Below, one piece after another: positions 47,901-63,600 of a stretch of DNA of 64,000 nucleotides (position 1 is the stretch's first letter; each line of letters opens with the position of its first letter). This DNA is from Macrostomum hystrix (taxonomy: Eukaryota; Animalia; Platyhelminthes), in assembly GCA_950097015.1 (NCBI GenBank), contig CATNEN010000035.1, forward strand, positions 682,001 through 746,000, in the 5' to 3' direction. Under the pieces are notes generated by a model, which ran no database searches, had not been told where the DNA came from, and worked only from the letters and a program-made list of their open reading frames with translations. Made by a program: the position numbers and the translations under genes.

Positions 47901-49563
47901 ATTCTCACGGCCGACACGGTTCGAACTCAGAACTTTCGTCTGGGCGCTTACGTGATTCGTTGGCGACGTCGCAGGCCGCAGCAGCAGCGCACAGAAGAAC
48001 AGTCGCATTCGTTTTCGGACAGTTTGCAGCAGGACCTACCCATTGTGAGCACTGTGGTGCCCCTGCCTACAGTGAATCTGTACAATCTGCCTCTGTGTGT
48101 CACCCTCAAGCTGCCGCCCTCTGGCACAGTCTACCAGCCGGTCTCGCTGTCCTACAGCCTGGAAAACCGGACTGCCTATCCGCAAGAGGTCCAATTCAGC
48201 GTTGACCGCAGCGACTGCTTTATGTTCTCTGGCATGAAGAGCGTAAGCTGACAGGCTGCAGTCTAGGGCCATGGGATCTGTGTGTTATGTGGGATAGAGG
48301 AAGCTGGTATCCAGGTAGATGGGATCTGTGTGTTATGTGGGATAGAGGAAGCTGGTATCCAGGTAGATGGGATCTGTGTATTTTGTGGGATAGTGGAAGC
48401 TGGGATCCAGGTTGGGAGGATCTGTATTTTGTGGGATAGAGGAATCTGGGATCCAGGTAGAGAGGATCTGTATTTTGTGGGATAGAGGAAGCTGGTATCC
48501 AGGTAGAGAGGATCTGTATTTTGTGGGATAGAGGAAGCTGGTATCCAGGTAGAGAGGATCTGTATTTTGTGGGATAGAGGAAGCTGGTATCCAGGTAGAG
48601 AGGATCTGTATTTTGTGGGATAGAGGAAGCTGGTATCCAGGTAGAGAGGATCTGTATTTTGTGGGATAGAGGAAGCTGGTATCCAGGTAGAGAGGATCTG
48701 TATTTTTTGGGATAGAGGAATCTGGTATCCAGGTAGAGAGGATCTGTATTTTGTGGGATAGAGGAAGCTGGTATCCAGGTAGAGAGGATCTGTATTTTGT
48801 GGGATAGAGGAAGCTGGTATCCATGTAGAGAGGATCTGTATTTTGTGGGATAGAGGAAGCTGGTATCCAGGTGGAGAGGATCTGTATTTTGTGGGATAGA
48901 GGAAGCTGGTATCCAGGTAGAGAGGATCTGTATTTTGTGGGATAGAGGAAGCTGGTATCCATGTAGAGAGGATCTGTATTTTGTGGGATAGAGGAAGCTG
49001 GGATCCAGGTAGAGAGGATCTGTATTTTGTGGGATAGAGGAAGCTGGTATCCAGGTAGAGAGGATCTGTATTTTGTGGGATAGAGGAAGCTGGTATCCAG
49101 GTAGAGAGGATCTGTATTTTGTGGGATAGAGGAAGCTGGTATCCAGGTAGAGAGGATCTGTATTTTGTGGGATAGAGGAAGCTGGTATCCAGGTAGAGAG
49201 GATCTGTATTTTGTGGGACCAAAGCCTTTTTAGCAATGGCTATAGGATGAAGGAGAAAAGTGTTTTCAGAATATATTTTCCATAAATAAATGATTAGTTT
49301 AAATCGGCGCCGCCCCGCAGGTGACCTTCCGCATCCTGCCGCAGACAACTCACATCCTGGAGTATGGCGCCTACCCCATGACTACCGGCCTGCTGGAGCT
49401 GCCCCGCATTGGCATCCGGTTGGACGGCACCGAGGTGCCAGTCTACACCCTGCTGAAGGACCTGCCCTCTCATCTGTTTGTAGCCCCTCCTGGCAAGTCC
49501 AGTTCAGACAGGCAGCAGCAGCAGCAGCTTTTGAACAACGGCGGAAACCTTGTCGAAGTGTGA
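29985..49563 (+). CDS. TRAPPC11: Trafficking protein particle complex subunit 11, ~1170 aa; exons 29985-30215, 31233-31616, 32690-32785, 32872-33119, 35167-35308, 37480-37650, 40269-40347, 40441-40495, 41131-41550, 42792-43175, 43570-43912, 45159-45284, 46425-46635, 47863-48242, 49321-49563
   Basis: Recognisable blocks: [59 protein letters not shown]. All 14 introns are GT-AG with consistent phases. Confidence 0.95.
30335..30980. repeat. Minisatellite, 18-nt unit (TAGTGTCCTCTACCCACC, ~35 copies), TRAPPC11 intron 1
   Basis: Direct inspection. Confidence 0.95.
31820..32165. repeat. Minisatellite, 17-nt unit (ATCTAATCAGACAGGAT, ~20 copies), TRAPPC11 intron 2
   Basis: Direct inspection. A separate ~75-nt tandem duplication follows at 32316-32500. 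Confidence 0.95.
33185..33710. mobile_element. Non-autonomous DNA transposon (family C), copy 2, TRAPPC11 intron 4
   Basis: TIR CAGTAGAACTACC / GGTAGTCCTACTG, flanked by TTAC and TTAA. Interior homologous to 12448-13028. Confidence 0.75.
33913..34168 (-). CDS. Candidate nested antisense micro-gene, 54 aa; exons 34168-34029 and 33937-33913
   Basis: GC-rich island with [52 protein letters not shown] donor, 91-nt intron ending TTTTTTAG, and two CCAAT boxes ~170-200 nt upstream. No homolog recognised. Confidence 0.3.
35335..37350. repeat. Minisatellite, 29-30-nt unit (GAACTGAATGATCTGGGATGGAGTCTGATA, ~65 copies) with higher-order blocks, TRAPPC11 intron 5
   Basis: Direct inspection. Confidence 0.95.
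37705..37905 (-). mobile_element. SINE family B copy, TRAPPC11 intron 6
   Basis: Reverse complement contains GGGTTCGATTC, GCATTGCTTCAGTTCA..GTTAAATGGGTACCAGCAT and GGCGTCCCTCCAGTCCATGGACTGAACAG. Confidence 0.8.
38004..39630 (-). mobile_element. Autonomous-looking IS630/Tc1/mariner DNA transposon with ~152-bp IR/DR-type TIRs and TA target duplication
   Basis: TIRs at 38004-38155 and 39476-39630 differ at only ~5 positions. TA at 38002-38003 and 39631-39632. The motif TTCGAATTCGTCA recurs ~4 times per TIR. Confidence 0.92.
38267..39322 (-). CDS. IS630/Tc1-type DDE transposase, 351 aa, intact ORF
   Basis: N-terminal HTH-like region, [14 protein letters not shown] and [13 protein letters not shown]. 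There are 30 residues between the second D and the E. Confidence 0.9.
   Translation of the reverse strand: MPYMRISSVDRSRLVRCFQQGRDWRLLAVELDIKRTTANDIIRRYVDEDRIELNARGGVVRPKFTEEMLEALTRYVEEKPTVTLKEMQQKLVADFPAAPVVTTQAISRRLDGTLCITLKDVRRVHGDWNSDVTKEARFLHMTWMLETGLFVRNLIYVDECGCNLWTARTKGWADFGNRAVMIANSQRGQNLTVALAVSPQLGLVHHRIFVGGFTAERFREFMIEVGTLVDDEFTVLADNARAHGVVNFGRPDQRLQFLPPYSPFLNATEMAISCMKAALKRRMTDPEVVFEVHDRQAAVAAGETLQNRRLRILSREVEAAMVAITEEKCRQWHEFTLRYGPRCLAHGEILD
39805..39885. repeat. 15-nt subterminal-type repeat (GCCACTCCGCGCCCT, ~5 copies), probable end of another DNA transposon
   Basis: Short GC-rich array in AT-rich sequence. Partner end not found. Confidence 0.5.
40560..41085. repeat. Degenerate 22-nt minisatellite (TTTTCATTATCGATTGGGATAT), TRAPPC11 intron 8
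   Basis: Direct inspection. Confidence 0.9.
41588..42712. repeat. Minisatellite, 20-22-nt unit (TCCCCCAATCCATTGACTTCTA, ~50 copies), TRAPPC11 intron 9
   Basis: Direct inspection. Confidence 0.95.
43193..43515. repeat. Minisatellite, 22-nt unit (CATCAGGCAGCTAGGTTTCCAG, ~14 copies), TRAPPC11 intron 10
   Basis: Direct inspection. Confidence 0.9.
44341..44639. mobile_element. MITE-like element with nested inverted repeats, TRAPPC11 intron 11
   Basis: CATTGTATACTTTTGGA (44341) vs TCCAAAAGTGTACAATG (to 44639). Inner IR TACTTTTGGACCACAGAC / GTCTATGGTCCAAAAGTA. GGCGTGCAACAATC occurs 3-4 times. Confidence 0.6.
44905..45110 (+). mobile_element. SINE family A 3' part
   Basis: GATGAGAAAGTC...TGTACACACCTGTGTGAG...GCTCAGGAGTCAGC...GCCCGCAGCCCTC, as at 58680-58850. 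Confidence 0.75.
45405..46395. repeat. Minisatellite, 17-nt unit (TCAATCCGATCTRTCAS, ~58 copies) with a ~300-nt higher-order duplication, TRAPPC11 intron 12
   Basis: Direct inspection. Confidence 0.95.
47195..47780. repeat. Purine-rich 25-nt minisatellite (GGGGTGGGTAGAGGAGAGAAGAGGA, ~23 copies), TRAPPC11 intron 13
   Basis: Direct inspection. Confidence 0.95.
48270..49218. repeat. Minisatellite, 46-nt unit (GGGATAGAGGAAGCTGGTATCCAGGTAGAGAGGATCTGTATTTTGT, ~20 copies), TRAPPC11 intron 14
   Basis: Direct inspection. It explains the minus-strand ORFs at 48220-49348. Confidence 0.95.
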
Positions 49564-52500: not shown

Positions 52501-54358
52501 CACATTCTATTTAGAATTGTTTCTTATAATATTCAAAAGAGCAGCTACATATATTGATAGGAGCTTTGTTACCTTAGTAACAAATTAGATTTAGTTTTTA
52601 ATATTAGCTTTACCTAGAGCTAGAGCCAAGGTCAGACAATATACCAAAAGTTTAATTTATTTATTTATTTAACTTATTTAATTTTAACTTCTTGACACAG
52701 TACAAATGAATCTTGAATTTATAATATCGTCAAATCATTTTTTTCTATTTTCTAAAAGGCCATTGTTTTTTAGATACTTTTCTAAAATATGGTCACTATA
52801 TATGCCAGGGGTAAACAAAATGGGCAGTTCCTCCACCTATGCTTCATATCTTCATTGGAATGTATTTGAGAGAAGTCACTTGACTATTCATATACTTTTT
52901 GTTGCAAACTGGATTTACAAATCTGGTAAACTGACCCAGTTCTTATTCTGGTTTTGATGTCTTACTGGAATTGCAGGTACTAATAAAGTACTGGAATTTC
53001 AATCAGTTTTCATTAGCAAACTGGATTTGTGTTCATGATTATGCAAGCTATATTGTTATCTTTTCGTTTTCAATTTTAGATGCTAAAAATAAATATTAAT
53101 TAAATAATGATTACTATTAAGAGTTCGAATTTTTGGGGATATCTGGAGATTGATTCCAACAGACAGCAGCCAATCTTTTTGACATGAGTTGCTATCCCAT
53201 CAAGCTATCTCTGGAATCCACCTTGTCGGCGGCACAAAACCTCTCCATATAGATTTGAAACTGTGTCACTCTCAATGTGAGGCCGCACCTATCATTTGTA
53301 TGCACAACTGACTTGGTTTTATTATGAGTCGGTTGTATTGCATACAAATGTTTGACTCCTATTGGCATGTAGTCAGTCACAGGTGTGTACTATAGTACCA
53401 CTGGTACAGCTGGGTGTCTAAGTCAGAATCTGTGGCATAATTCAGTTTTAGCAAGCCCAGTGAGATAAACACACCAATTTCTATTAAGACAGGTGCAATT
53501 CAGATTTAAGTAAGTATGCTCCAATAGTTTGTCTTAAGCAGCTGCAGTTTCAGATATGAGCTTAGTATTGAGTAGTCTGTCCTTGCTCTATTATAAACAG
53601 ACTACCTACTTCTGTTACCTGTGCTGTTACAACCTTGCTCTTTCCTTGCCTATTTAGATTTTCTTCCACTGCATCTCATAATAACTTTACTATTACTTAC
53701 ACACTCCATGCATTGACTACATAACATACTTAATTACTTACCACAGATTTAATACTATTATCTGCTGTCTGTAATATCTGTAATTCCCACTTTCTAGGAA
53801 ACACTTCTAAGAAAACTCCTATGCCAGTTCTGTGTTGTACTGTGTTGTAGCAAGCCAGTACTGATTTTTCTGTTAACACATCTGTTAGCAAATTGGGCAA
53901 CATGCCTGTTATTGGTTAAATTTCTAGATCTTACAGTTTAGCAAACCGGATTTAATTCTGTTTCACCTGGTAACAACTCTGGTACCTGTAGCATTTCGTA
54001 ACACAATTCTGGTTTTTAACTCTGCCACTAACAGAATACCATTACCAGATTTGACACTTGCGTACCATACTGGTCATCTTACCGGTCGAGCTACCGGTTA
54101 AGTTAGCCAGAGGGAATTTTGGGATAAGCTTTGTTGTATTTTTGTAGTCCTAAGGAGTTTAATTTTGTCACACTCTTGCTGATATTGCAGGAATGCGGTT
54201 TGTTAAATCTAATATTTCTTAGAATATATATGTATATATATTGCTATATATTCAATATTTTCACTTAACTTATCTGAACCTAAAACATTGGAAAAGATTT
54301 CTCATACATAGGATCAACTTTATACTATCATCACATTTTAAGCAAAAAAATATAAACA

Positions 54359-54904
54359 ATGTCTGTTGCTTATCTAAAAAACTGCGTCTCACTGACCAAT
54401 CGCTGCCTAATTGTCTGCTGGAATCGTTATTTAGCCAGGCTTGCCACCAGACAGCAGTCAACAAGCCTGACATTGTCACAATTCAGGAGCGCGCCAATTA
54501 GTCGACATCTGTGCTCATCAGTTGAGGCTCAAGTTAATAGGCAATCTAATTCATCAATAATTTGTTATAAATGCCTCAAACCAGGCCATCTGGCTAAGGA
54601 CTGTACGAGTTCTGGCCGATTGTGCCGCCGCTGCGGCCAGGAGGGTCACGTGACTAAGGACTGCCAGTCGCCAGTCCGGTGTCGACTCTGCGGCGATGAA
54701 GGCCACTTGGCGAAGGATTGCAAATCGTTTAAATTGCGTTGCTACAGATGCGGCCAACTGGGTCACATTGCCAAGGATTGTAAGTCTGCGGCTCTGTGCC
54801 TCAACTGCGGCCATGAGGGTCACATTGCGAAAGATTGCAAACTGCCTGTTCGGTGTCGCAACTGCGGCCAAGAGGGTCACATATCTACTAGCTGTCCGAA
54901 CTAA
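54359..54904 (+). CDS. Single-exon CNBP-like protein with six CCHC zinc knuckles and a mitochondrial-presequence-like N-terminus, 181 aa
   Basis: Six C-x2-C-x4-H-x4-C motifs with 5-6-residue linkers. A-rich ATG context. AATAAA at 54952. The first 55 aa have 7 K/R, no D/E, and end in RHLCSS. Confidence 0.85.
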   Translation: MSVAYLKNCVSLTNRCLIVCWNRYLARLATRQQSTSLTLSQFRSAPISRHLCSSVEAQVNRQSNSSIICYKCLKPGHLAKDCTSSGRLCRRCGQEGHVTKDCQSPVRCRLCGDEGHLAKDCKSFKLRCYRCGQLGHIAKDCKSAALCLNCGHEGHIAKDCKLPVRCRNCGQEGHISTSCPN

Positions 54905-55104
54905 CAATTGTTTATTTTTTATCCATTACTTTGGTTTTACTTTGAGCTTGAAATAAAAAGTTAGCACCTTGTTGAAATGATTTTTCATGTTTTCTGCCCA
55001 ACCTATTTTCTTTTGTAAATCGATCTATCAGTTTTAGCATAGCTGTTTCCTATGTTTCTACTGCCAGTAGTGAATTCAGCGATTTTTCCGATACATTTTT
55101 GCAG

Positions 55105-58100
55105 CCTACCGACGAGCTGCTAAAGTGCGGCCTGCTGTTCGAGCCGCCCACCCTGCTGCTGCTGTACAGACGGGGCGGTCTGCTTGGCCGGACACGGAAG
55201 CGATCCGTGCCCCTGGCGGCGCTGATGGCCGAGGCCAAGAAGGCCACCAACGAGCCTGAAGCTAACTATTCGCCGCGTGCACTCGCTGAAAGACTCAAAC
55301 AGGTGCGATTCAGTTCTGCCTTCGTTTTCTTTTCATCAAGTAATGTTTCTTATGCCTCATCGAAGTCGATATTCAGAATATATTATTGATTCCTAAATCA
55401 ATCACTTGATACCTAAATCCATCACTTGATCCCTAAACCATCACTTGATCCCTAAATCCATCAATTGATCCCCAAATCCATCACTTGATCCCTAAATCCA
55501 TCAATTGATCCCCAAATCCATAACTTGATCCCTAAATCCACCAATTGATCCCTAAATCCATCACTTGATCCCTAAATCCATCCATTGATCCCTACATCCA
55601 TCACTTGATCCCTAGATCCATCCATTGATCCCTACATCCATAACTTGATACCTAAATCCATCACTTGATCCCTAAACCCATCACTTGATCCCTAGATCCA
55701 TCCATTGATCCCTACATCCATAACTTGATACCTAAATCCATCACTTGATCCCTAAATCCATCACTTGATCCCTAAATCCATCCATTGATCCCTACATCCA
55801 TCACTTGATCCCTAGATCCATCCATTGATCCCTACATCCATAACTTGATACCTAAATCCATCACTTGATCCCTGAATCCATCAATTGATCCCCAAATCCA
55901 TCACTTGATCCCTAAATCCATAAATTGATCCCCAAATCCATCACTTGATCCCTAAATCTATCAATTGATCCCTAAATCCATCACTTGATCCCTAAATCCA
56001 TCCATTGATCCCTACATCCATAACTTTATCCCTAGATCCATAAATTGATCCCCAAATCCATCAATTGATCCCTATATCCATCAATTGATCCCTAAATCCA
56101 TCAATTGATCCCTAAACCCTTCAATGGATCCATTAATCCACCATTGACCCCAAATTAAACACCGATAATCTATTTTAAGCAATTGATACCGAAATCCTTA
56201 ACTAATTCCTAAATCCATCATTGATCTTAAATTCAATGTTGATTCCTAAATGGATCATTGATCCCTTAATTCAACATCGATCCGTAATTCACATTAATCC
56301 TTATGCCCACCACCGATCCAAAATTAAATATTGATCCTAAATCTATCATTTATCCGTAATTCAGTTCTAACCCAAAGTTCATAGTTGATCTTAATTAATA
56401 ATTATCCCAGGCTTTAAAATTTATTATGGATCCTAAATATTTCTTATCCCCAATCCATCATTGGTCCAAAAGTCTTAAAAGAATCCATGTATTTTAGCTA
56501 ATAGATTTTTTATTCTAATTCATCTTCTAAGGTTTTAATAATTGCCCTAAGTCAGCCAATCTGTTTCTATGTGCCCACTGCCCACTACCTTTTTCTATCG
56601 AAAAATGCAGGACAAGCGCCACGGGGATCTGATTAAGCAGGTGAGTCAGCTCCAGTTAGAGCGCCTACTGGCCATTGTCCGTGACGTCACAATAGGCGGC
56701 CTCAGCAAAGAGCAGAGCCTGGCCAAACAGCGCCAGATGGAGAAGATCGATCCGCTGGAGGATCTCAACAAGGTGGACGAAGAGACCCTGCAGCGAAAGA
56801 AGGCCGCAATGCAGGTGAGAACCAATGCAGGTGGTTAGGGTGTCGGAATCACGACTTCAAGGTCGGGGGTTCGACTCCCGACTCAAGTGGAACAAATTTT
56901 GTCCTTTAGCAAGACACTTAACTCTGCATTGCTTCAGTTCACCCAGCTGTTAAATGGGTACCAGCATTAGCTGAGATAATTTAAAGTGGGTGTGGCGTCC
57001 CCCAGTCCATGGACTGAACAGCTGAACGCAGCCTTCAGATGCGCCGCGCAATAGCTGCGGCTGTGCTGTCGCTTGCACATCTGGTCGACTTGGGGCAGGT
57101 GTAATAAATTATTTTATTATTCATATCGTGTCTCTATCCGAATCCTATTTAGAGGGTGGGGATAATTTTGTGTCGCTATCCGAATCCCATCTAGAGAATG
57201 GGGATTATTTAGTGTCCATATCCAAATCCCATCTAGAGAATGGGGATTATTTAGTGTCCATATCCAAATCCCATCTAGAGAATGGGGATTATTTAGTGTC
57301 CATATCCAAATCCCATCTAGAGAATGGGGATTATTTAGTGTCCATATCCAAATCCCATCTAGAGAATGGGGATTATTTAGTGTCCATATCCAAATCCCAT
57401 CTAGAGAATGGGATTATTTTGTGTCCATATCCAAATCCCATCTAGAGAATGGGGATTATTTAATGTCTATATCCTAATACTATCTAGAGAATGGGGATTA
57501 TTTAATGTCTATATCCAAATACCATCTAGAGAATGGGGATTATTTAATGTCTATATCCAAATACTATCTAGAGAATGGGGATTATTTAGTGTCTATATCC
57601 GAATCCCATCTAGAGAATGGGGATTATTTAGTGTCTATATCCGAATCCCATCTAGAGAATGGGGATTATTTTGTGTCGCTCTCCGAATCCCATCTAGAGA
57701 ATGGGGATTATTTTGTGTCTATATCCAAATACCATCTAGAGAATGGGGATTATTTAGTGTCTATATCCGAATCCCATCTAGAGAATGGGGATTATTTAGT
57801 GTCTATATCCGAATCCCATCTAGAGAATGGGGATTATTTTGTGTCGCTCTCCGAATCCCATCTAGAGAATGGGGATAATTTTGTGTCTCTATTCGAATCC
57901 GATCTAGACAATAGGGAAAAATTTATGTCGCTTTACAATTCCGATGGCAGATCCTTCCACACCCTTTCCATCCTATGTTATTTGCGGACATTCTGTCCCT
58001 CTAACTCCCAGCCTTTATAAAAGTCTATCTGAAGGTCATATTTCCTCAACTCTATGCGCTTGCAATGTGAAACAGATGTGAAAATATTTTCTTTCTTACG

Positions 58101-58395
58101 AGCTCAAACAGACGGCCCCTCACGTGCCATTGGCCCGCAGCCACTTCTTGAAAAATGACAAAATTGCTTTTTATAAATGCAAGCGCAAACCGTAAATACG
58201 CTTTTTAACTTGGGCCTCGACGCCTCTTTTACCGTCTACTAACTAACCCAGGAAGAGTTTGAGAAGCACCAACTCAAGCCAGGCGATCCCGGCTATGTCT
58301 ACGACAAGGAGGTGGACTTTGGAGCGGACGCTGGCGGCGGCTCCTCCGTTGAACACTGCGAATGGGACTCGGAAGACGACCAGAGCGGCTTCTGA
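55105..58395 (+). CDS. CEP19: Centrosomal protein 19 homolog; exons 55105-55302, 56611-56814, 58252-58395; initiator not found in the genomic sequence
   Basis: KCGLLFEPPTLLLLY, IDPLEDLNKVDEETLQRKKAAM and PGDPGYVYDKEVDF...CEWDSE match CEP19 motifs. Phase-0 GT-AG introns. Confidence 0.9.
55395..56150. repeat. Minisatellite, 20-nt unit (ATCCATCACTTGATCCCTAA, ~37 copies), CEP19 intron
   Basis: Direct inspection. It decays into degenerate units up to ~56460. Confidence 0.95.
56830..57105 (+). mobile_element. tRNA-derived SINE family B with CORE-like central domain, best copy
   Basis: B-box GGTTCGACTCC, followed by TGTCCTTTAGCAAGACACTTAACTCTGCATTGCTTCAGTTCACCCAGCTGTTAAATGGGTACC, which resembles the CORE/Meta-type SINE domains. 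Further copies or fragments at ~3965, ~7125(-), 8345, 20400(-), 28235 and 37705(-). Confidence 0.8.
57125..57900. repeat. Minisatellite, 42-nt unit (CTAGAGAATGGGGATTATTTAGTGTCCATATCCAAATCCCAT, ~18 copies), CEP19 intron
   Basis: Direct inspection. Confidence 0.95.
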
Positions 58396-60475: not shown

Positions 60476-60653
60476 GTATCTTGAGTGTTTTAGCCATCTG
60501 ATAAGATAAGCTTAAGTAGTGTTTGCAATGCTTATATTGTAAATTTATAACTCTCTAACAACCGAACTTCAGATGCGCTAGCTTAGATAATCTTCAGCAA
60601 TCGGAGCTTAACGACGGACCTGAGGACGCCCTAGTTACAGGAAATACAAAACA

Positions 60654-63600
60654 ATGGCTTCCTCATCAACGTCGTCTTCGGCTTCCAAGAGGCCACGGCT
60701 GCGCCTAGAGCTGCCCTCAGTTGCCAGCTGTTCTTCCCTCGGCGTCGGCGGCAGCAGAAACGTCAAAAAGCAGTCCAACAGCCGCAGTGGTGGCCCCTCC
60801 CTCTCCCGCCAGCACTCGGACCAGCCTCCGGGGGCATCGGCGGCCTCCGCTGGCCGGCTCTGGCTCTGCCCGGACGACGATCTCGGCCGTCAGGCGGCTG
60901 ACAGCGCCGCCGAGGATCGGCGCCAGATGTGGACCGATCGGTACTCGCCAGAAAGCCGCGACGAGCTCTGCTTGCACAAGAGAAAGCTAGAAGAATTGGA
61001 GGCCTGCTTGCGCTCGCGACCCCGTCTGCTGCTCATTCACGGACCCTGCGGAGCTGGCAAATCAGCCGCTGTGCGAGTCCTTTGCCAGCAGCTCAACATG
61101 CGGCCGGCCTACCTGAGCGAGGAGTTGGACGCCTGCGCTGGCGTTGGCTCCACCGAGGCGCTGCAGGTGACACTCCGGCTTCACCGCCCTGCCTTCTCTG
61201 TCCCAACAAAGTCTTCCCTCCCATTCTCCAACCCCTTCGTACTTCTGTGCACTCTGTTATATTTGACCTTTCAACACTCACCCACCTGCCCTTCTCCGCC
61301 GGGCTTAACTACTCTCCGCCCTTTCCCCTTCGCCCTTTCCCCTCCGCACTTCCCCTCCACACTTTCCCCCTCGCCCTTTCCCCTCCGCACTTTCCCCTCC
61401 GCACTTTCCCCTCCGCACTTTCCCCTCCGCACTTTCCCCTCCGCACTTCCCCTCCGCACTTTCCCCTCCGCACTTTCCCCTCCGCACTTCCCCTCCGCAC
61501 TTCCCCTCCACACTTCCCCTCCGCACTTTCCCCTCCGCACTTTCCCCTCCGCACTTCCCCTCCGCACTTTCCCCTACGCCCTTTCCCCTCCGCACTTTCC
61601 CCTACGCCCTTTCCTCTCCGCCCTTGGCCACTCAACCCTTTCCCCTCCGCCCTTCGCCCAGCCAAGGCGTTTAACAGCCCCAATGTTCGCACCTTGGCAG
61701 GCTCTGGTTCGTCTAGCCAGATTTGGTCAGGCCGGTGTCATTGTGTGGGACGAGCCAACCCTGACGCCAACATTCGGCGAAAATCAGCAGGGCCAGTTTG
61801 GCTCCTCCGCCAGCGAGGCCCTGGTCCTGCGCTCTGTGCTAGATCAGTTCCTGGCCCGCTGTCGCGATGTCAGCCTGGTGCTCATCACATGCAATGAGCG
61901 ACTGGTGTCCCGCGATTGGCTGGAGGATAACGGAGCTGTCATACTGCAGGTAAACTTTCCACTGAGGATTTAAGCCAGTTATTTCAGTCGAATAAATCTA
62001 ATTCCACATGTAAATTGACATAATTAATCCTAATCTCTAGTGGTAATCGAACCAATTTGTCGAAATCAACAGGTAATTTGACCTGGCTAAACGAAATATA
62101 ACGAAATCGATCCCTGATATCAATAGATAGACCACTTTATACTGTTATACTGTTCTACTGTTAAGTTGACCCAATTTACCTAAACCTCATGGAGTTGACC
62201 TTCACCGAATAACCCCTGGTAATTGACCCGATTCTCCCAAATTCCCAGGTAAATAACCCATTTCGCTGTACCCAGTTAATTGAGTTGCTGTGATAATTGT
62301 CCCAACTCAGCGATTTAGTCCCTAATTCTGTTAATCACCGAAAATTCACATAAATCCCCCCACCCAGGTGAATCCGGTAGCCCGCACGCAGCTGGTTCGC
62401 TGCCTGAATGCCATCCTAACTCGTCGCCGCCTACGCCCGGCCTCCTACAAGTCGCTAATTGAATCCGTGGCCACGGCAGCCGACGGCGACATTCGAGCAG
62501 CCGTCTCCGGTTTGCAATTTAGCCTGCAATTCGCGCTGACTACTACTGGCAGTAGCTCGGGTGGGGTGCTGTTCAGAGATACGCCATATCAGCTGTTTCA
62601 CGCTGTGGGCAAATTGTTGCACGCCAAGAGGGCCGACACAGCGACTCGGGAGGCCGCACCGCCGCTGCTCGAAGAGCCCGAGACTGTCTCTGAGCGATGC
62701 AGCCTGCCTGTGGATCTGCTGCTTTCCTTCGTTCAGGTAAGCCTGCTTCAGAATTCCCTGGGGAACTGGAGAATGGTAGAGATTCAGCCACCCCTGAGGA
62801 TGATCGCAGAGATTCAGCCACCCCTGAGGATGATCACAGAGATTCAGCCACCCCTGAGGATGATCGCAGAGATTCAGCCACCCCTGAGGATGATCACAGA
62901 GATTCAGCCACCCCTGAGGATGATCGCAGAGATTCAGCCACCCCTGAGGATGATAGCAGAGATTCAGCCACCCCTGAGGATGATCGCAGAGATTCAGCCA
63001 CCCCTGAGGATGATCGCAGAGATTCAGCCACCCCTGAGGATGATCGCAGAGATTCAGCCACCCCTGAGGATGATCGCAGAGATTCAGCCACCCCTGAGGA
63101 TGATGGCAGAGATTCACCAGCCCTGAGGATGATGGCAGCGATTCAGCCACCCCTGAGGATGATCGCAGAGATTCAGCCACCCCTGAGGATGATAGCAGAG
63201 ATTCAGCCACCCCTGAGGATGATCGCAGAGATTCAGCCACCCCTGAGGATGATCGCAGAGATTCAGCCACCCCTGAGGATGATCGCAGAGATTCAGCCAC
63301 CCCTGAGGATGATCGCAGAGATTCAGCCACCCCTGAGGATGATCGCAGAGATTCAGCCACCCCTGATGATGATCGCAGAGATTCACCAGCCCTGAGGATG
63401 ATGGCAGAGATTCACCAGCCCTGAGGATGATGGCAGAGATTCACCAGCCCTGAGGATGATGGCAGAGATTCAGCACCCCTGAGTTGCCGCTTGAATTGAT
63501 TAAAATGTAATCCCATTCTGATCCCGCAGACAAACGCGGCTGTCCACTTCTCCCAGGACGCCATCGAGCCGTTGGCCATGCTTTCCGATGCCTTCAGTCT

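What the first reader, a model, noticed from the sequence alone, without database searches (positions are those of the whole stretch)
54904..55302. CCHC-CEP19 dicistron in which the spliced leader probably donates the CEP19 start codon
Seen: only 200 nt separate the CCHC stop (54904) from a strong acceptor TTTTTGCAG| (55104), with AATAAA (54952) and U-rich tracts between. The exon starts exactly in phase 0 (CCT ACC GAC...) and there is no in-frame ATG or room for a promoter. Adding ATG gives MPTDELLKCGLLFEPP, the same N-terminal length as vertebrate MMCTAKKCGIRFQPP. Established: flatworm spliced leaders end in a conserved AUG that can serve as initiator, and operon genes are resolved by polyadenylation plus trans-splicing ~100 nt apart. 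Inference: CEP19 translation depends on trans-splicing, coupling a ciliary/centriolar gene to the zinc-knuckle gene.
Basis: partly seen in the sequence, partly recalled or inferred. Interest (0 to 1): 0.8.

Follow-up and report, generated by a model that had tools for sequence, protein, structure and literature searches.

The report
Spliced leader supplies CEP19 start codon
In this Macrostomum flatworm the cilium/centriole gene CEP19 has no start codon of its own; RNA data show that the trans-spliced leader, which ends in AUG, is joined exactly in frame in front of its first codon. This is a confirmed new example of a mechanism already known in flatworms.

Summary
The six-knuckle CCHC ORF runs 54359-54904. 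AATAAA lies at 54952-57. The acceptor tttttgcag ends at 55104. The first CEP19 exon (55105-55302) is in phase 0, with no in-frame ATG back to the stop at 55018-20.

RNA-derived contigs of four public runs (two studies, two organism labels) carry the last 15-25 nt of the published Macrostomum lignano spliced leader (...TTATTGCATG). It is joined directly to CCTACCGAC at 55105, and the three longer contigs run on into exon 2. No cis-spliced upstream exon is seen. The CCHC gene is also SL trans-spliced, at 54342|54343.

M. lignano has the same CCHC -> CEP19 order and the same ATG-less, phase-0 acceptor, and GenBank flags its CEP19 as 5'-partial. The 40 codons before the first genomic in-frame ATG evolve under purifying selection (dN/dS 0.21). 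In human CEP19, residues 1-15 are required for FGFR1OP binding and centrosome targeting.

SL donation of the AUG is therefore shown at RNA level. Its use by ribosomes is inferred, strongly. Co-transcription with the CCHC gene is plausible: the gap without RNA contigs is 107 nt, synteny is conserved, and both genes carry the same transcriptional-unit name in M. lignano. It is not shown directly.

The mechanism is known (Cheng et al. 2006), and this scan already confirmed it on other DNA of this genome (CHMP6 and others). I class it as a new member of a known kind, of modest interest.

The parts
54332..54342 (+). SL trans-splice acceptor of the CCHC gene (cacattttaag|)
   Evidence: Contigs of X2-X4 carry GCGAAGACTCAATTTATTGCAT before base 54342. 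The g at 54342 coincides with the last G of the SL.
54343..54501 (+). Out-of-frame ORF opened by the SL AUG on the CCHC mRNA (Met + 53 codons, stop TAG at 54499-54501). It overlaps the CCHC start codon.
   Evidence: In-silico SL + mRNA translation. The SL junction itself is shown.
54359..54904 (+). CCHC zinc-knuckle gene CDS (181 aa, six knuckles), with its own genomic ATG
   Evidence: Translation; Pfam zf-CCHC E=1e-38, 6 stretches; covered by RNA contigs.
54905..54996 (+). CCHC 3' UTR as far as RNA contigs reach; AATAAA at 54952-54957
   Evidence: Contigs end at 54947 (X3, X4) or 54996 (X2); sequence read. The exact poly(A) site was not determined.
54997..55104 (+). Intercistronic/outron segment with no RNA contig. 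It ends in a U-rich tract and the acceptor tttttgcag (55096-55104).
   Evidence: Zero depth in all four runs; sequence.
55048..55079 (+). Short block conserved with M. lignano upstream of the CEP19 acceptor (TCCTATG..CTACTG..AGTAG..TT.AG); function unknown
   Evidence: Alignment. The motif is not otherwise tied to acceptors. Folding is no better than shuffles.
55105..55302 (+). CEP19 exon 1: phase 0, no ATG of its own before the conserved N-terminus. The SL AUG is joined directly in front of it.
   Evidence: SL-exon junction in X1-X4 contigs; Pfam CEP19 positions 2-41; dN/dS 0.21-0.22 against M. lignano.
56611..56814 (+). CEP19 exon 2
   Evidence: The letters following 55303 in the 817-nt contigs of X2-X4 and the 227-nt contig of X1 equal 56612 onward, so exon 1 is joined to exon 2. 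Pfam CEP19 47.6 bits. Splice sites.
58252..58395 (+). CEP19 exon 3 with stop TGA
   Evidence: Pfam CEP19 37.9 bits. The model gives 546 nt, in frame, 181 codons + stop. The 817-nt contig is long enough for exons 1-3 plus about 246 nt of 3' UTR (inference).

Best explanation
The window comes from a Macrostomum flatworm that is not M. lignano. CEP19 is a downstream gene, 200 nt behind a CCHC zinc-knuckle gene on the same strand. Its pre-mRNA is cut at the acceptor AG at 55103-55104 and receives the 35-nt spliced leader. The last three bases of the leader, AUG, land directly in front of CCT ACC GAC. The mature mRNA therefore reads AUG-Pro-Thr-Asp-Glu-Leu-Leu-Lys-Cys-Gly..., a full-length 182-residue CEP19. 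The genome holds no start codon for this protein, so only trans-spliced RNA can be translated into CEP19 with its N-terminus.

The CCHC gene is trans-spliced with the same leader. The pair most likely forms an SL-resolved operon: polyadenylation of CCHC near 54970-54996, then trans-splicing about 110 nt further on.

Shown: both SL junctions, the frame, exon 1 joined to exon 2, and the same architecture and gene order in M. lignano.
Inferred: initiation at the SL AUG, and co-transcription of the two genes.
For: 1; contigs of X1-X4 (two studies, two organism labels) read ...CTGCGAAGACTCAATTTATTGCAT + g(55104) + CCTACC.... The 817-nt contigs of X2-X4 run on past 55302 into exon 2, and so does the short X1 contig. 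This is processed mRNA.
2; the published M. lignano SL is CGGTCTCTTACTGCGAAGACTCAATTTATTGCATG. It is identical over the 25 nt seen.
3; the SL AUG is the only AUG upstream of the conserved N-terminus, and it is in frame. The next in-frame AUG is codon 42 of the 182-residue protein.
4. Pfam CEP19 begins at exon residue 7.
5. M. lignano CEP19 (PAA53774.1, PAA84840.1) is annotated 'partial' and starts SGDELLKCG. Locus L002 has aattgcag|TCTGGCGAC, the same phase-0 acceptor with no ATG. M. lignano has no Met at the place of the window's internal Met, and older models are 70-aa stubs starting at the first genomic ATG.
6; dN/dS is 0.21 (dS 0.82) for the 40 codons before the first genomic in-frame ATG. 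These codons are therefore translated.
7. (PMC5469608): human CEP19 lacking residues 1-15 loses FGFR1OP binding and centrosome localisation.
8; all flatworm SLs end in AUG. Cheng et al. 2006 reported more than 40 S. mansoni cDNAs that need it as initiator.
9. For the operon: the segment without RNA contigs is 107 nt. CCHC -> CEP19 order is conserved in two M. lignano copies. The genes are named Mlig002438g7/g8 and g12/g13, and that prefix marks one cluster of assembled transcriptional units that were cut at SL sites. The published operon criterion is under 1 kb between same-strand SL genes, with a peak near 100 bp.
Against: - No protein or ribosome data, so use of the SL AUG is not observed. 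Its context (U at -3, C at +4) is weak.
- Only assembled contigs were laid, not raw reads. Minor isoforms (a cis-spliced 5' exon, other acceptors) and the share of trans-spliced RNA cannot be judged.
- The runs are not on record as RNA. Their RNA origin is deduced from the spliced, SL-bearing contigs.
- No contig bridges 54997-55103, so a polycistronic precursor is not shown. An internal promoter with a short outron is not excluded.
- In M. lignano the spacer is about 1 kb, inflated by a minisatellite.
Confidence: 0.85

Rival explanations
1. CEP19 is SL trans-spliced and uses the SL AUG, but it is a monocistronic gene with its own promoter and a short outron. That promoter would lie in the spacer or inside the CCHC gene. 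The neighbourhood with CCHC would then be mere proximity, not an operon.
For: No contig spans 54997-55103. Most SL trans-spliced genes in M. lignano are not in operons. In M. lignano the spacer is about 1 kb, which is room for a promoter.
Against: At most 107 nt is left between the RNA-supported CCHC 3' UTR and the acceptor. Gene order and strand are conserved at dS of about 0.8-1. Both M. lignano genes carry the same transcriptional-unit prefix with consecutive numbers. The spacing equals the roughly 100-bp operon peak.
Confidence: 0.3
2. The SL AUG is not used. CEP19 is translated from the internal in-frame AUG (codon 42 of the 182-residue protein) or from a non-AUG codon, giving an N-terminally shortened protein.
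For: The context of the SL AUG is weak (sequence). On the neighbouring CCHC mRNA the same SL AUG must be bypassed by scanning ribosomes to reach the real start, so bypass does occur.
Against: Codons 1-40 are under purifying selection and match the start of the Pfam CEP19 profile. M. lignano has no Met at the corresponding internal position. Human CEP19 without residues 1-15 fails to bind FGFR1OP or to reach the centrosome.
Confidence: 0.07
3. A cis-spliced upstream mini-exon carrying an ATG is the real 5' end, and the SL form is a minor by-product.
For: Contigs drop rare variants, so absence is weak evidence (tool caveat). Another follow-up in this genome found one such hidden micro-exon (note s1-316733, not checked here).
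Against: All four runs give the SL junction as the assembled form and show no joint into 55105 from elsewhere in 53000-55104. The M. lignano annotation, built from SL-trimmed reads, also starts the mRNA at the acceptor.
Confidence: 0.03

Closest known systems
Flatworm mRNAs that take their initiator Met from the SL 3'-terminal AUG (Cheng, Cohen, Ndegwa & Davis 2006, J Biol Chem 281:733, Schistosoma mansoni; cited in PMC12582326 and PMC9851317)
   Same: The SL ends in AUG. The acceptor sits in phase 0 directly before codon 2. The mature mRNA has no other AUG for the conserved N-terminus.
   Different: A different flatworm lineage (free-living Macrostomorpha) and a different gene (CEP19). Translation from the SL AUG is not demonstrated here. 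The state is shown to be shared by two Macrostomum species.
SL-resolved operons of Macrostomum lignano (Ustyantsev & Berezikov 2021, PMC8629364; Wudarski et al. 2017, PMC5730564)
   Same: Same-strand neighbours, both trans-spliced with the single 35-nt SL. There is about 100 nt between the upstream 3' end and the downstream acceptor, and the acceptor is of the [T/C]TNCAG type.
   Different: No precursor RNA was seen for this pair in the window's species. The first gene of the pair is itself trans-spliced, so the true first gene and the promoter are unknown.
Other SL-donated start codons in this same genome noted by this scan (CHMP6, s1-408126; mitochondrial TyrRS and a thimet-type peptidase, s1-316733)
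   Same: The same leader and the same ATG-less phase-0 first exon.
   Different: Those are other loci, and their claims were not re-tested here. In the CEP19 case the N-terminus supplied through the SL start corresponds to a segment experimentally required in the human orthologue.
C. elegans SL2-type operons
   Same: Polyadenylation of the upstream gene and trans-splicing of the downstream gene occur about 100 nt apart.
   Different: Macrostomum has one SL for all positions. The nematode SLs do not end in AUG and do not donate start codons in this way (my own knowledge for the last point).

Membership tests
SL-AUG-initiated flatworm mRNA | The spliced leader ends in AUG | tested here: met
   Loose ends read ...TTATTGCAT + G at the junction. 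The published SL ends GCATG.
SL-AUG-initiated flatworm mRNA | The SL is joined so that its AUG is in frame with the conserved ORF | tested here: met
   Junction at 55104|55105; SL + CDS translates to a 182-aa CEP19.
SL-AUG-initiated flatworm mRNA | No other in-frame AUG upstream of the conserved N-terminal residues in the mature mRNA | tested here: met
   The SL holds a single ATG, and exon 1 has none before codon 42 of the full protein. Genomic upstream frame: stop at 55018-20, no ATG.
SL-AUG-initiated flatworm mRNA | Ribosomes initiate at the SL AUG | not testable with these tools
   Indirect support only: dN/dS 0.21 for the upstream 40 codons, and the human N-terminus is essential.
SL-resolved operon | Adjacent same-strand genes with a short intercistronic spacer and an SL trans-spliced downstream gene | tested here: met
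   200 nt from stop to acceptor, at most 107 nt without RNA, SL on both genes. Fits the criterion of PMC8629364.
SL-resolved operon | A single polycistronic precursor transcript from one promoter | tested here: inconclusive
   No bridging contig. The M. lignano orthologues share one transcriptional-unit prefix, g7/g8 and g12/g13, which suggests an assembled precursor there.
CEP19 (Pfam PF14933) | Match to the family profile above the gathering score | tested here: met
   Exon 2 scores 47.6 bits and exon 3 scores 37.9 bits against a cut-off of 27. Exon 1 alone scores 20.7 bits. Together they cover profile positions 2-151.
zf-CCHC protein (Pfam PF00098) | CX2CX4HX4C knuckles matching the profile | tested here: met
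   130 bits, six stretches.

The most novel reading that the evidence does not exclude
The M. lignano contig NIVC01003025.1, where both SL acceptors (before CCHC and before CEP19) read ...CATG| instead of ...GCAG|, may be a real allele or homeologue rather than a polishing error. In that case the 3' end of the spliced leader would have been copied from mRNA back into the genome. An SL-donated AUG would have become a genomic AUG at exactly the same codon, a caught-in-the-act route between SL-dependent and autonomous start codons.
Probability: 0.07. Interest if true: 0.7.

Novelty: new member of a known kind. Interest (0 to 1): 0.3.

Why it matters
**Gene annotation.** Without the SL, CEP19 is called 5'-partial or is reduced to a 70-residue stub. 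Genome-only gene finders will systematically truncate such genes in flatworms.

**Biology.** The segment that depends on the SL AUG corresponds to the human residues needed for FGFR1OP binding and centrosome targeting. A functional CEP19 in this animal should therefore exist only on trans-spliced mRNA. That gives a clean, testable case of translation licensed by trans-splicing, in a species group where transgenesis exists.

The mechanism itself has been known since 2006, and this scan has already confirmed it elsewhere in this genome. It adds an example, plus evidence of conservation between two species, rather than a new principle.

Tried and rejected
- The look-up of encoding contigs with the window's CCHC protein found no record.
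- The word-based protein search with the exon-1 peptide found only the M. lignano cluster. Searching again with the full M. lignano protein found only itself. No other flatworm CEP19 could therefore be compared, and nothing can be said about how old the ATG-less state is.
- PDB sequence search found no CEP19 chain.
- The large representative search was not used. The protein's identity is not open and the claim does not rest on absence of relatives.
- The SL RNA gene is not in the window.
- The palindromic core of the conserved spacer block (CTACTGnnAGTAG) occurs elsewhere in the window in places unrelated to acceptors. The spacer does not fold better than shuffles. I therefore make no claim of a processing element.
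- The 'genomic ATG' before CEP19 in M. lignano locus L001 was first taken as a possible own start codon. I rejected this as the likely state because the sister copy L002 has a canonical acceptor, and because L001 shows the same kind of replacement at the CCHC acceptor too.
- ARAGORN finds no tRNA in the tRNA-like stretch of intron 2.
Full report
**1. What is in the sequence**

- The + strand holds an ORF from ATG 54359 to TAA 54902-54904 (181 aa). It has six zf-CCHC knuckles (Pfam E=1e-38) behind a knuckle-free N-terminal third.
- AATAAA lies at 54952-54957. U-rich stretches follow, and the acceptor tttttgcag ends at 55104.
- From 55105 the frame CCT ACC GAC... is open to the donor CAG|gtgcga at 55302. 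Read upstream, the same frame meets a stop at 55018-55020 with no ATG in between.
- With two further exons (56611-56814 and 58252-58395, all with AG/GT borders) the model is 546 nt, in frame. The three exon peptides cover positions 2-151 of Pfam CEP19; exon 2 scores 47.6 bits and exon 3 scores 37.9 bits against a cut-off of 27.
- Exon residue 7 aligns to profile position 2. The family domain therefore begins 5-6 residues after the acceptor, and only a start codon is missing.

**2. RNA evidence**

The run search returned five runs. Four small ones from one study hold 64-69% of the sampled words, about the exonic share of the query. One from a second study, with a different organism label, holds 11%. 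I laid four of them on 53000-55380.

- In all four, one contig covers 55104-55303. It is preceded by ...CTGCGAAGACTCAATTTATTGCAT (15 nt in X1, 24 nt in X2-X4).
- It is followed by ACAAGCGCCACG..., which is exon 2 from 56612 onward.
- The g at 55104 and the g at 55303 coincide with the last base of the leader and the first base of exon 2, which is why the match extends one base each way.
- The contigs are therefore processed mRNA: leader, then exon 1, then exon 2.
- The 817-nt contigs are long enough to hold all three exons plus about 246 nt of 3' UTR (inference from lengths).
- No joint from anywhere in 53000-55104 into 55105 is reported, and 54997-55103 has no RNA contig.
- A second contig covers 54342-54947 (X3, X4) or 54342-54996 (X2), preceded by GCGAAGACTCAATTTATTGCAT. 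The CCHC gene is thus trans-spliced too, at 54342|54343, 16 nt before its ATG.

The leader equals the published 35-nt M. lignano SL, CGGTCTCTTACTGCGAAGACTCAATTTATTGCATG (PMC8629364). The genus-level conservation of this SL and its terminal ATG is noted in PMC10468722.

Caveats:
- These are assembled contigs, which hide rare isoforms and give no abundances.
- The runs are not on record as RNA. That they are RNA follows from the spliced, leader-bearing contigs.

**3. Frame and start codon**

SL plus the CDS has a single upstream ATG, the terminal one of the SL. From it the mRNA encodes a 182-residue CEP19 starting Met-Pro-Thr-Asp-Glu-Leu-Leu-Lys-Cys-Gly. The next in-frame ATG is codon 42 of that protein.

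**4. Comparison with M. lignano**

- The only close relative found for the exon-1 peptide is M. lignano CEP19 (67% identity). The window therefore belongs to another Macrostomum species.
- Both GenBank copies (PAA53774.1, PAA84840.1) are flagged 'partial' and begin SGDELLKCG without Met.
- Older UniProt models are 70-residue stubs beginning at the first genomic in-frame ATG.
- Both loci keep the order CCHC -> CEP19 on one strand. L001 also keeps Rad17 downstream, as in the window at 60654 onward.
- Locus L002 has aattgcag|TCTGGCGAC, the same phase-0 acceptor with no ATG. It has ctattgcag|caacgcggcaATG before CCHC.
- Between the two species the 40 codons upstream of the window's first genomic in-frame ATG have dN/dS 0.21 at dS 0.82. 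This is coding constraint on a stretch that can only be translated from the SL AUG.
- M. lignano has no Met at the position of the window's internal Met.

**5. Function of the part that depends on the SL AUG**

In human cells CEP19(16-167) no longer binds FGFR1OP and no longer localises to the centrosome. RABL2 binding maps to residues 121-150 (Nishijima et al. 2017, PMC5469608). A protein started at the internal AUG would lack the corresponding segment.

**6. Operon question**

For:
- Same strand, with at most 107 nt between RNA-supported CCHC sequence and the acceptor.
- The same SL on both genes.
- Conserved order at dS near 1.
- The M. lignano genes are named Mlig002438g7/g8 and g12/g13. 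In that annotation the prefix denotes a cluster of assembled 'transcriptional units', which were then cut into genes at SL and poly(A) sites (PMC5730564).
- The pair meets the published operon criterion: under 1 kb between same-strand SL genes, with the main peak near 100 bp (PMC8629364).

Against:
- No precursor contig here.
- A roughly 1-kb spacer in M. lignano, inflated by a 23-nt minisatellite.
- CCHC is itself trans-spliced, so the promoter and the first gene are unknown. The next + strand coding region upstream ends at 49563, 4.8 kb away.

I put co-transcription at about 0.65.

**7. Relation to what is known**

All reported flatworm SLs end in AUG. Cheng et al. (2006) showed it can be the initiator, and more than 40 S. 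mansoni cDNAs need it (as cited in PMC12582326, and PMC9851317). The Macrostomum genome papers note the terminal ATG as a start codon. This scan's earlier follow-ups report the same mechanism at other loci of this genome (CHMP6; mitochondrial TyrRS and a peptidase). I did not re-test those.

The present case is thus a new, well-supported member of a known kind. It has two modest additions: conservation of the ATG-less state and of the gene pair between two Macrostomum species, and a functional argument from the human orthologue.

**8. Side observations**

(a) On the CCHC mRNA the same SL AUG is out of frame. It opens a 54-codon ORF that overlaps the real start. In M. lignano it is also out of frame, with 10 nt between. 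Neighbouring genes thus use and must bypass the same AUG.

(b) M. lignano contig L001 differs from L002 by about 1% single-base changes. The only multi-base replacements in 2 kb fall exactly on the two SL acceptors and create ...CATG|. That assembly was polished with RNA-seq reads, so I read this as mis-polishing by SL-bearing reads. A real cDNA-templated conversion cannot be excluded without DNA reads.

(c) A 32-nt block (55048-55079) upstream of the acceptor is conserved with M. lignano. It shows no significant fold or association with acceptors.

**9. Limits**

Noticed in passing
window 54343-54501 (+): On the CCHC mRNA the SL AUG lies 16 nt before the genomic ATG (54359) and is out of frame. 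It opens a 54-codon ORF overlapping the true start. The M. lignano orthologue also has the SL AUG out of frame (10 nt spacer). Ribosomes must bypass the same AUG that the neighbouring CEP19 needs.
   Followed up: partly
L001:6489-6493 and L001:7997-8000 (M. lignano NIVC01003025.1) versus L002:6508-6512 and L002:7997-8000: In one of two about 99%-identical M. lignano copies, both SL acceptors read ...GCATG| / ...TCATG| instead of ...TTGCAG|. These are the only multi-base differences in 2 kb. The likely cause is mis-polishing of the assembly by SL-bearing RNA-seq reads (Pilon was run with RNA-seq). If so, similar false genomic ATGs may sit at other acceptors of that assembly.
   Followed up: partly
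window 55048-55079 (+): A block of about 32 nt (TCCTATG..CTACTG..AGTAG..TT.AG) lies 25-57 nt upstream of the CEP19 trans-splice site and is conserved with M. lignano in an otherwise unalignable spacer. It does not fold better than shuffles. Its role is unknown.
   Followed up: partly
window 55385-56281 and 57128-57917: Both CEP19 introns are inflated by minisatellites (20-nt unit x ~45 copies; 42-nt unit x ~19 copies). The M. lignano spacer between CCHC and CEP19 holds an unrelated 23-nt minisatellite.
   Followed up: no
window about 56833-57100 (+): A tRNA-like stretch (T-arm-like GGTTCGACTCCCGAC) followed by a SINE-core-like sequence sits at the start of CEP19 intron 2. ARAGORN calls no tRNA. 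It is probably a tRNA-derived SINE fragment.
   Followed up: partly
window 60636-60656 (+): The Rad17-like gene downstream (ATG at 60654) has a ttacag acceptor 13 nt before its own ATG. An SL AUG joined there would be out of frame. I did not test whether it is trans-spliced or belongs to the same unit. Rad17 also follows CEP19 in M. lignano L001.
   Followed up: no
window 54359-54904 versus L001:6495-6932: The CCHC protein has six knuckles (181 aa) here, but the M. lignano orthologue is 145 aa and shorter in the knuckle array. A 57-nt tandem repeat (2.4 copies, 54749-54882) shows recent knuckle duplication.
   Followed up: no
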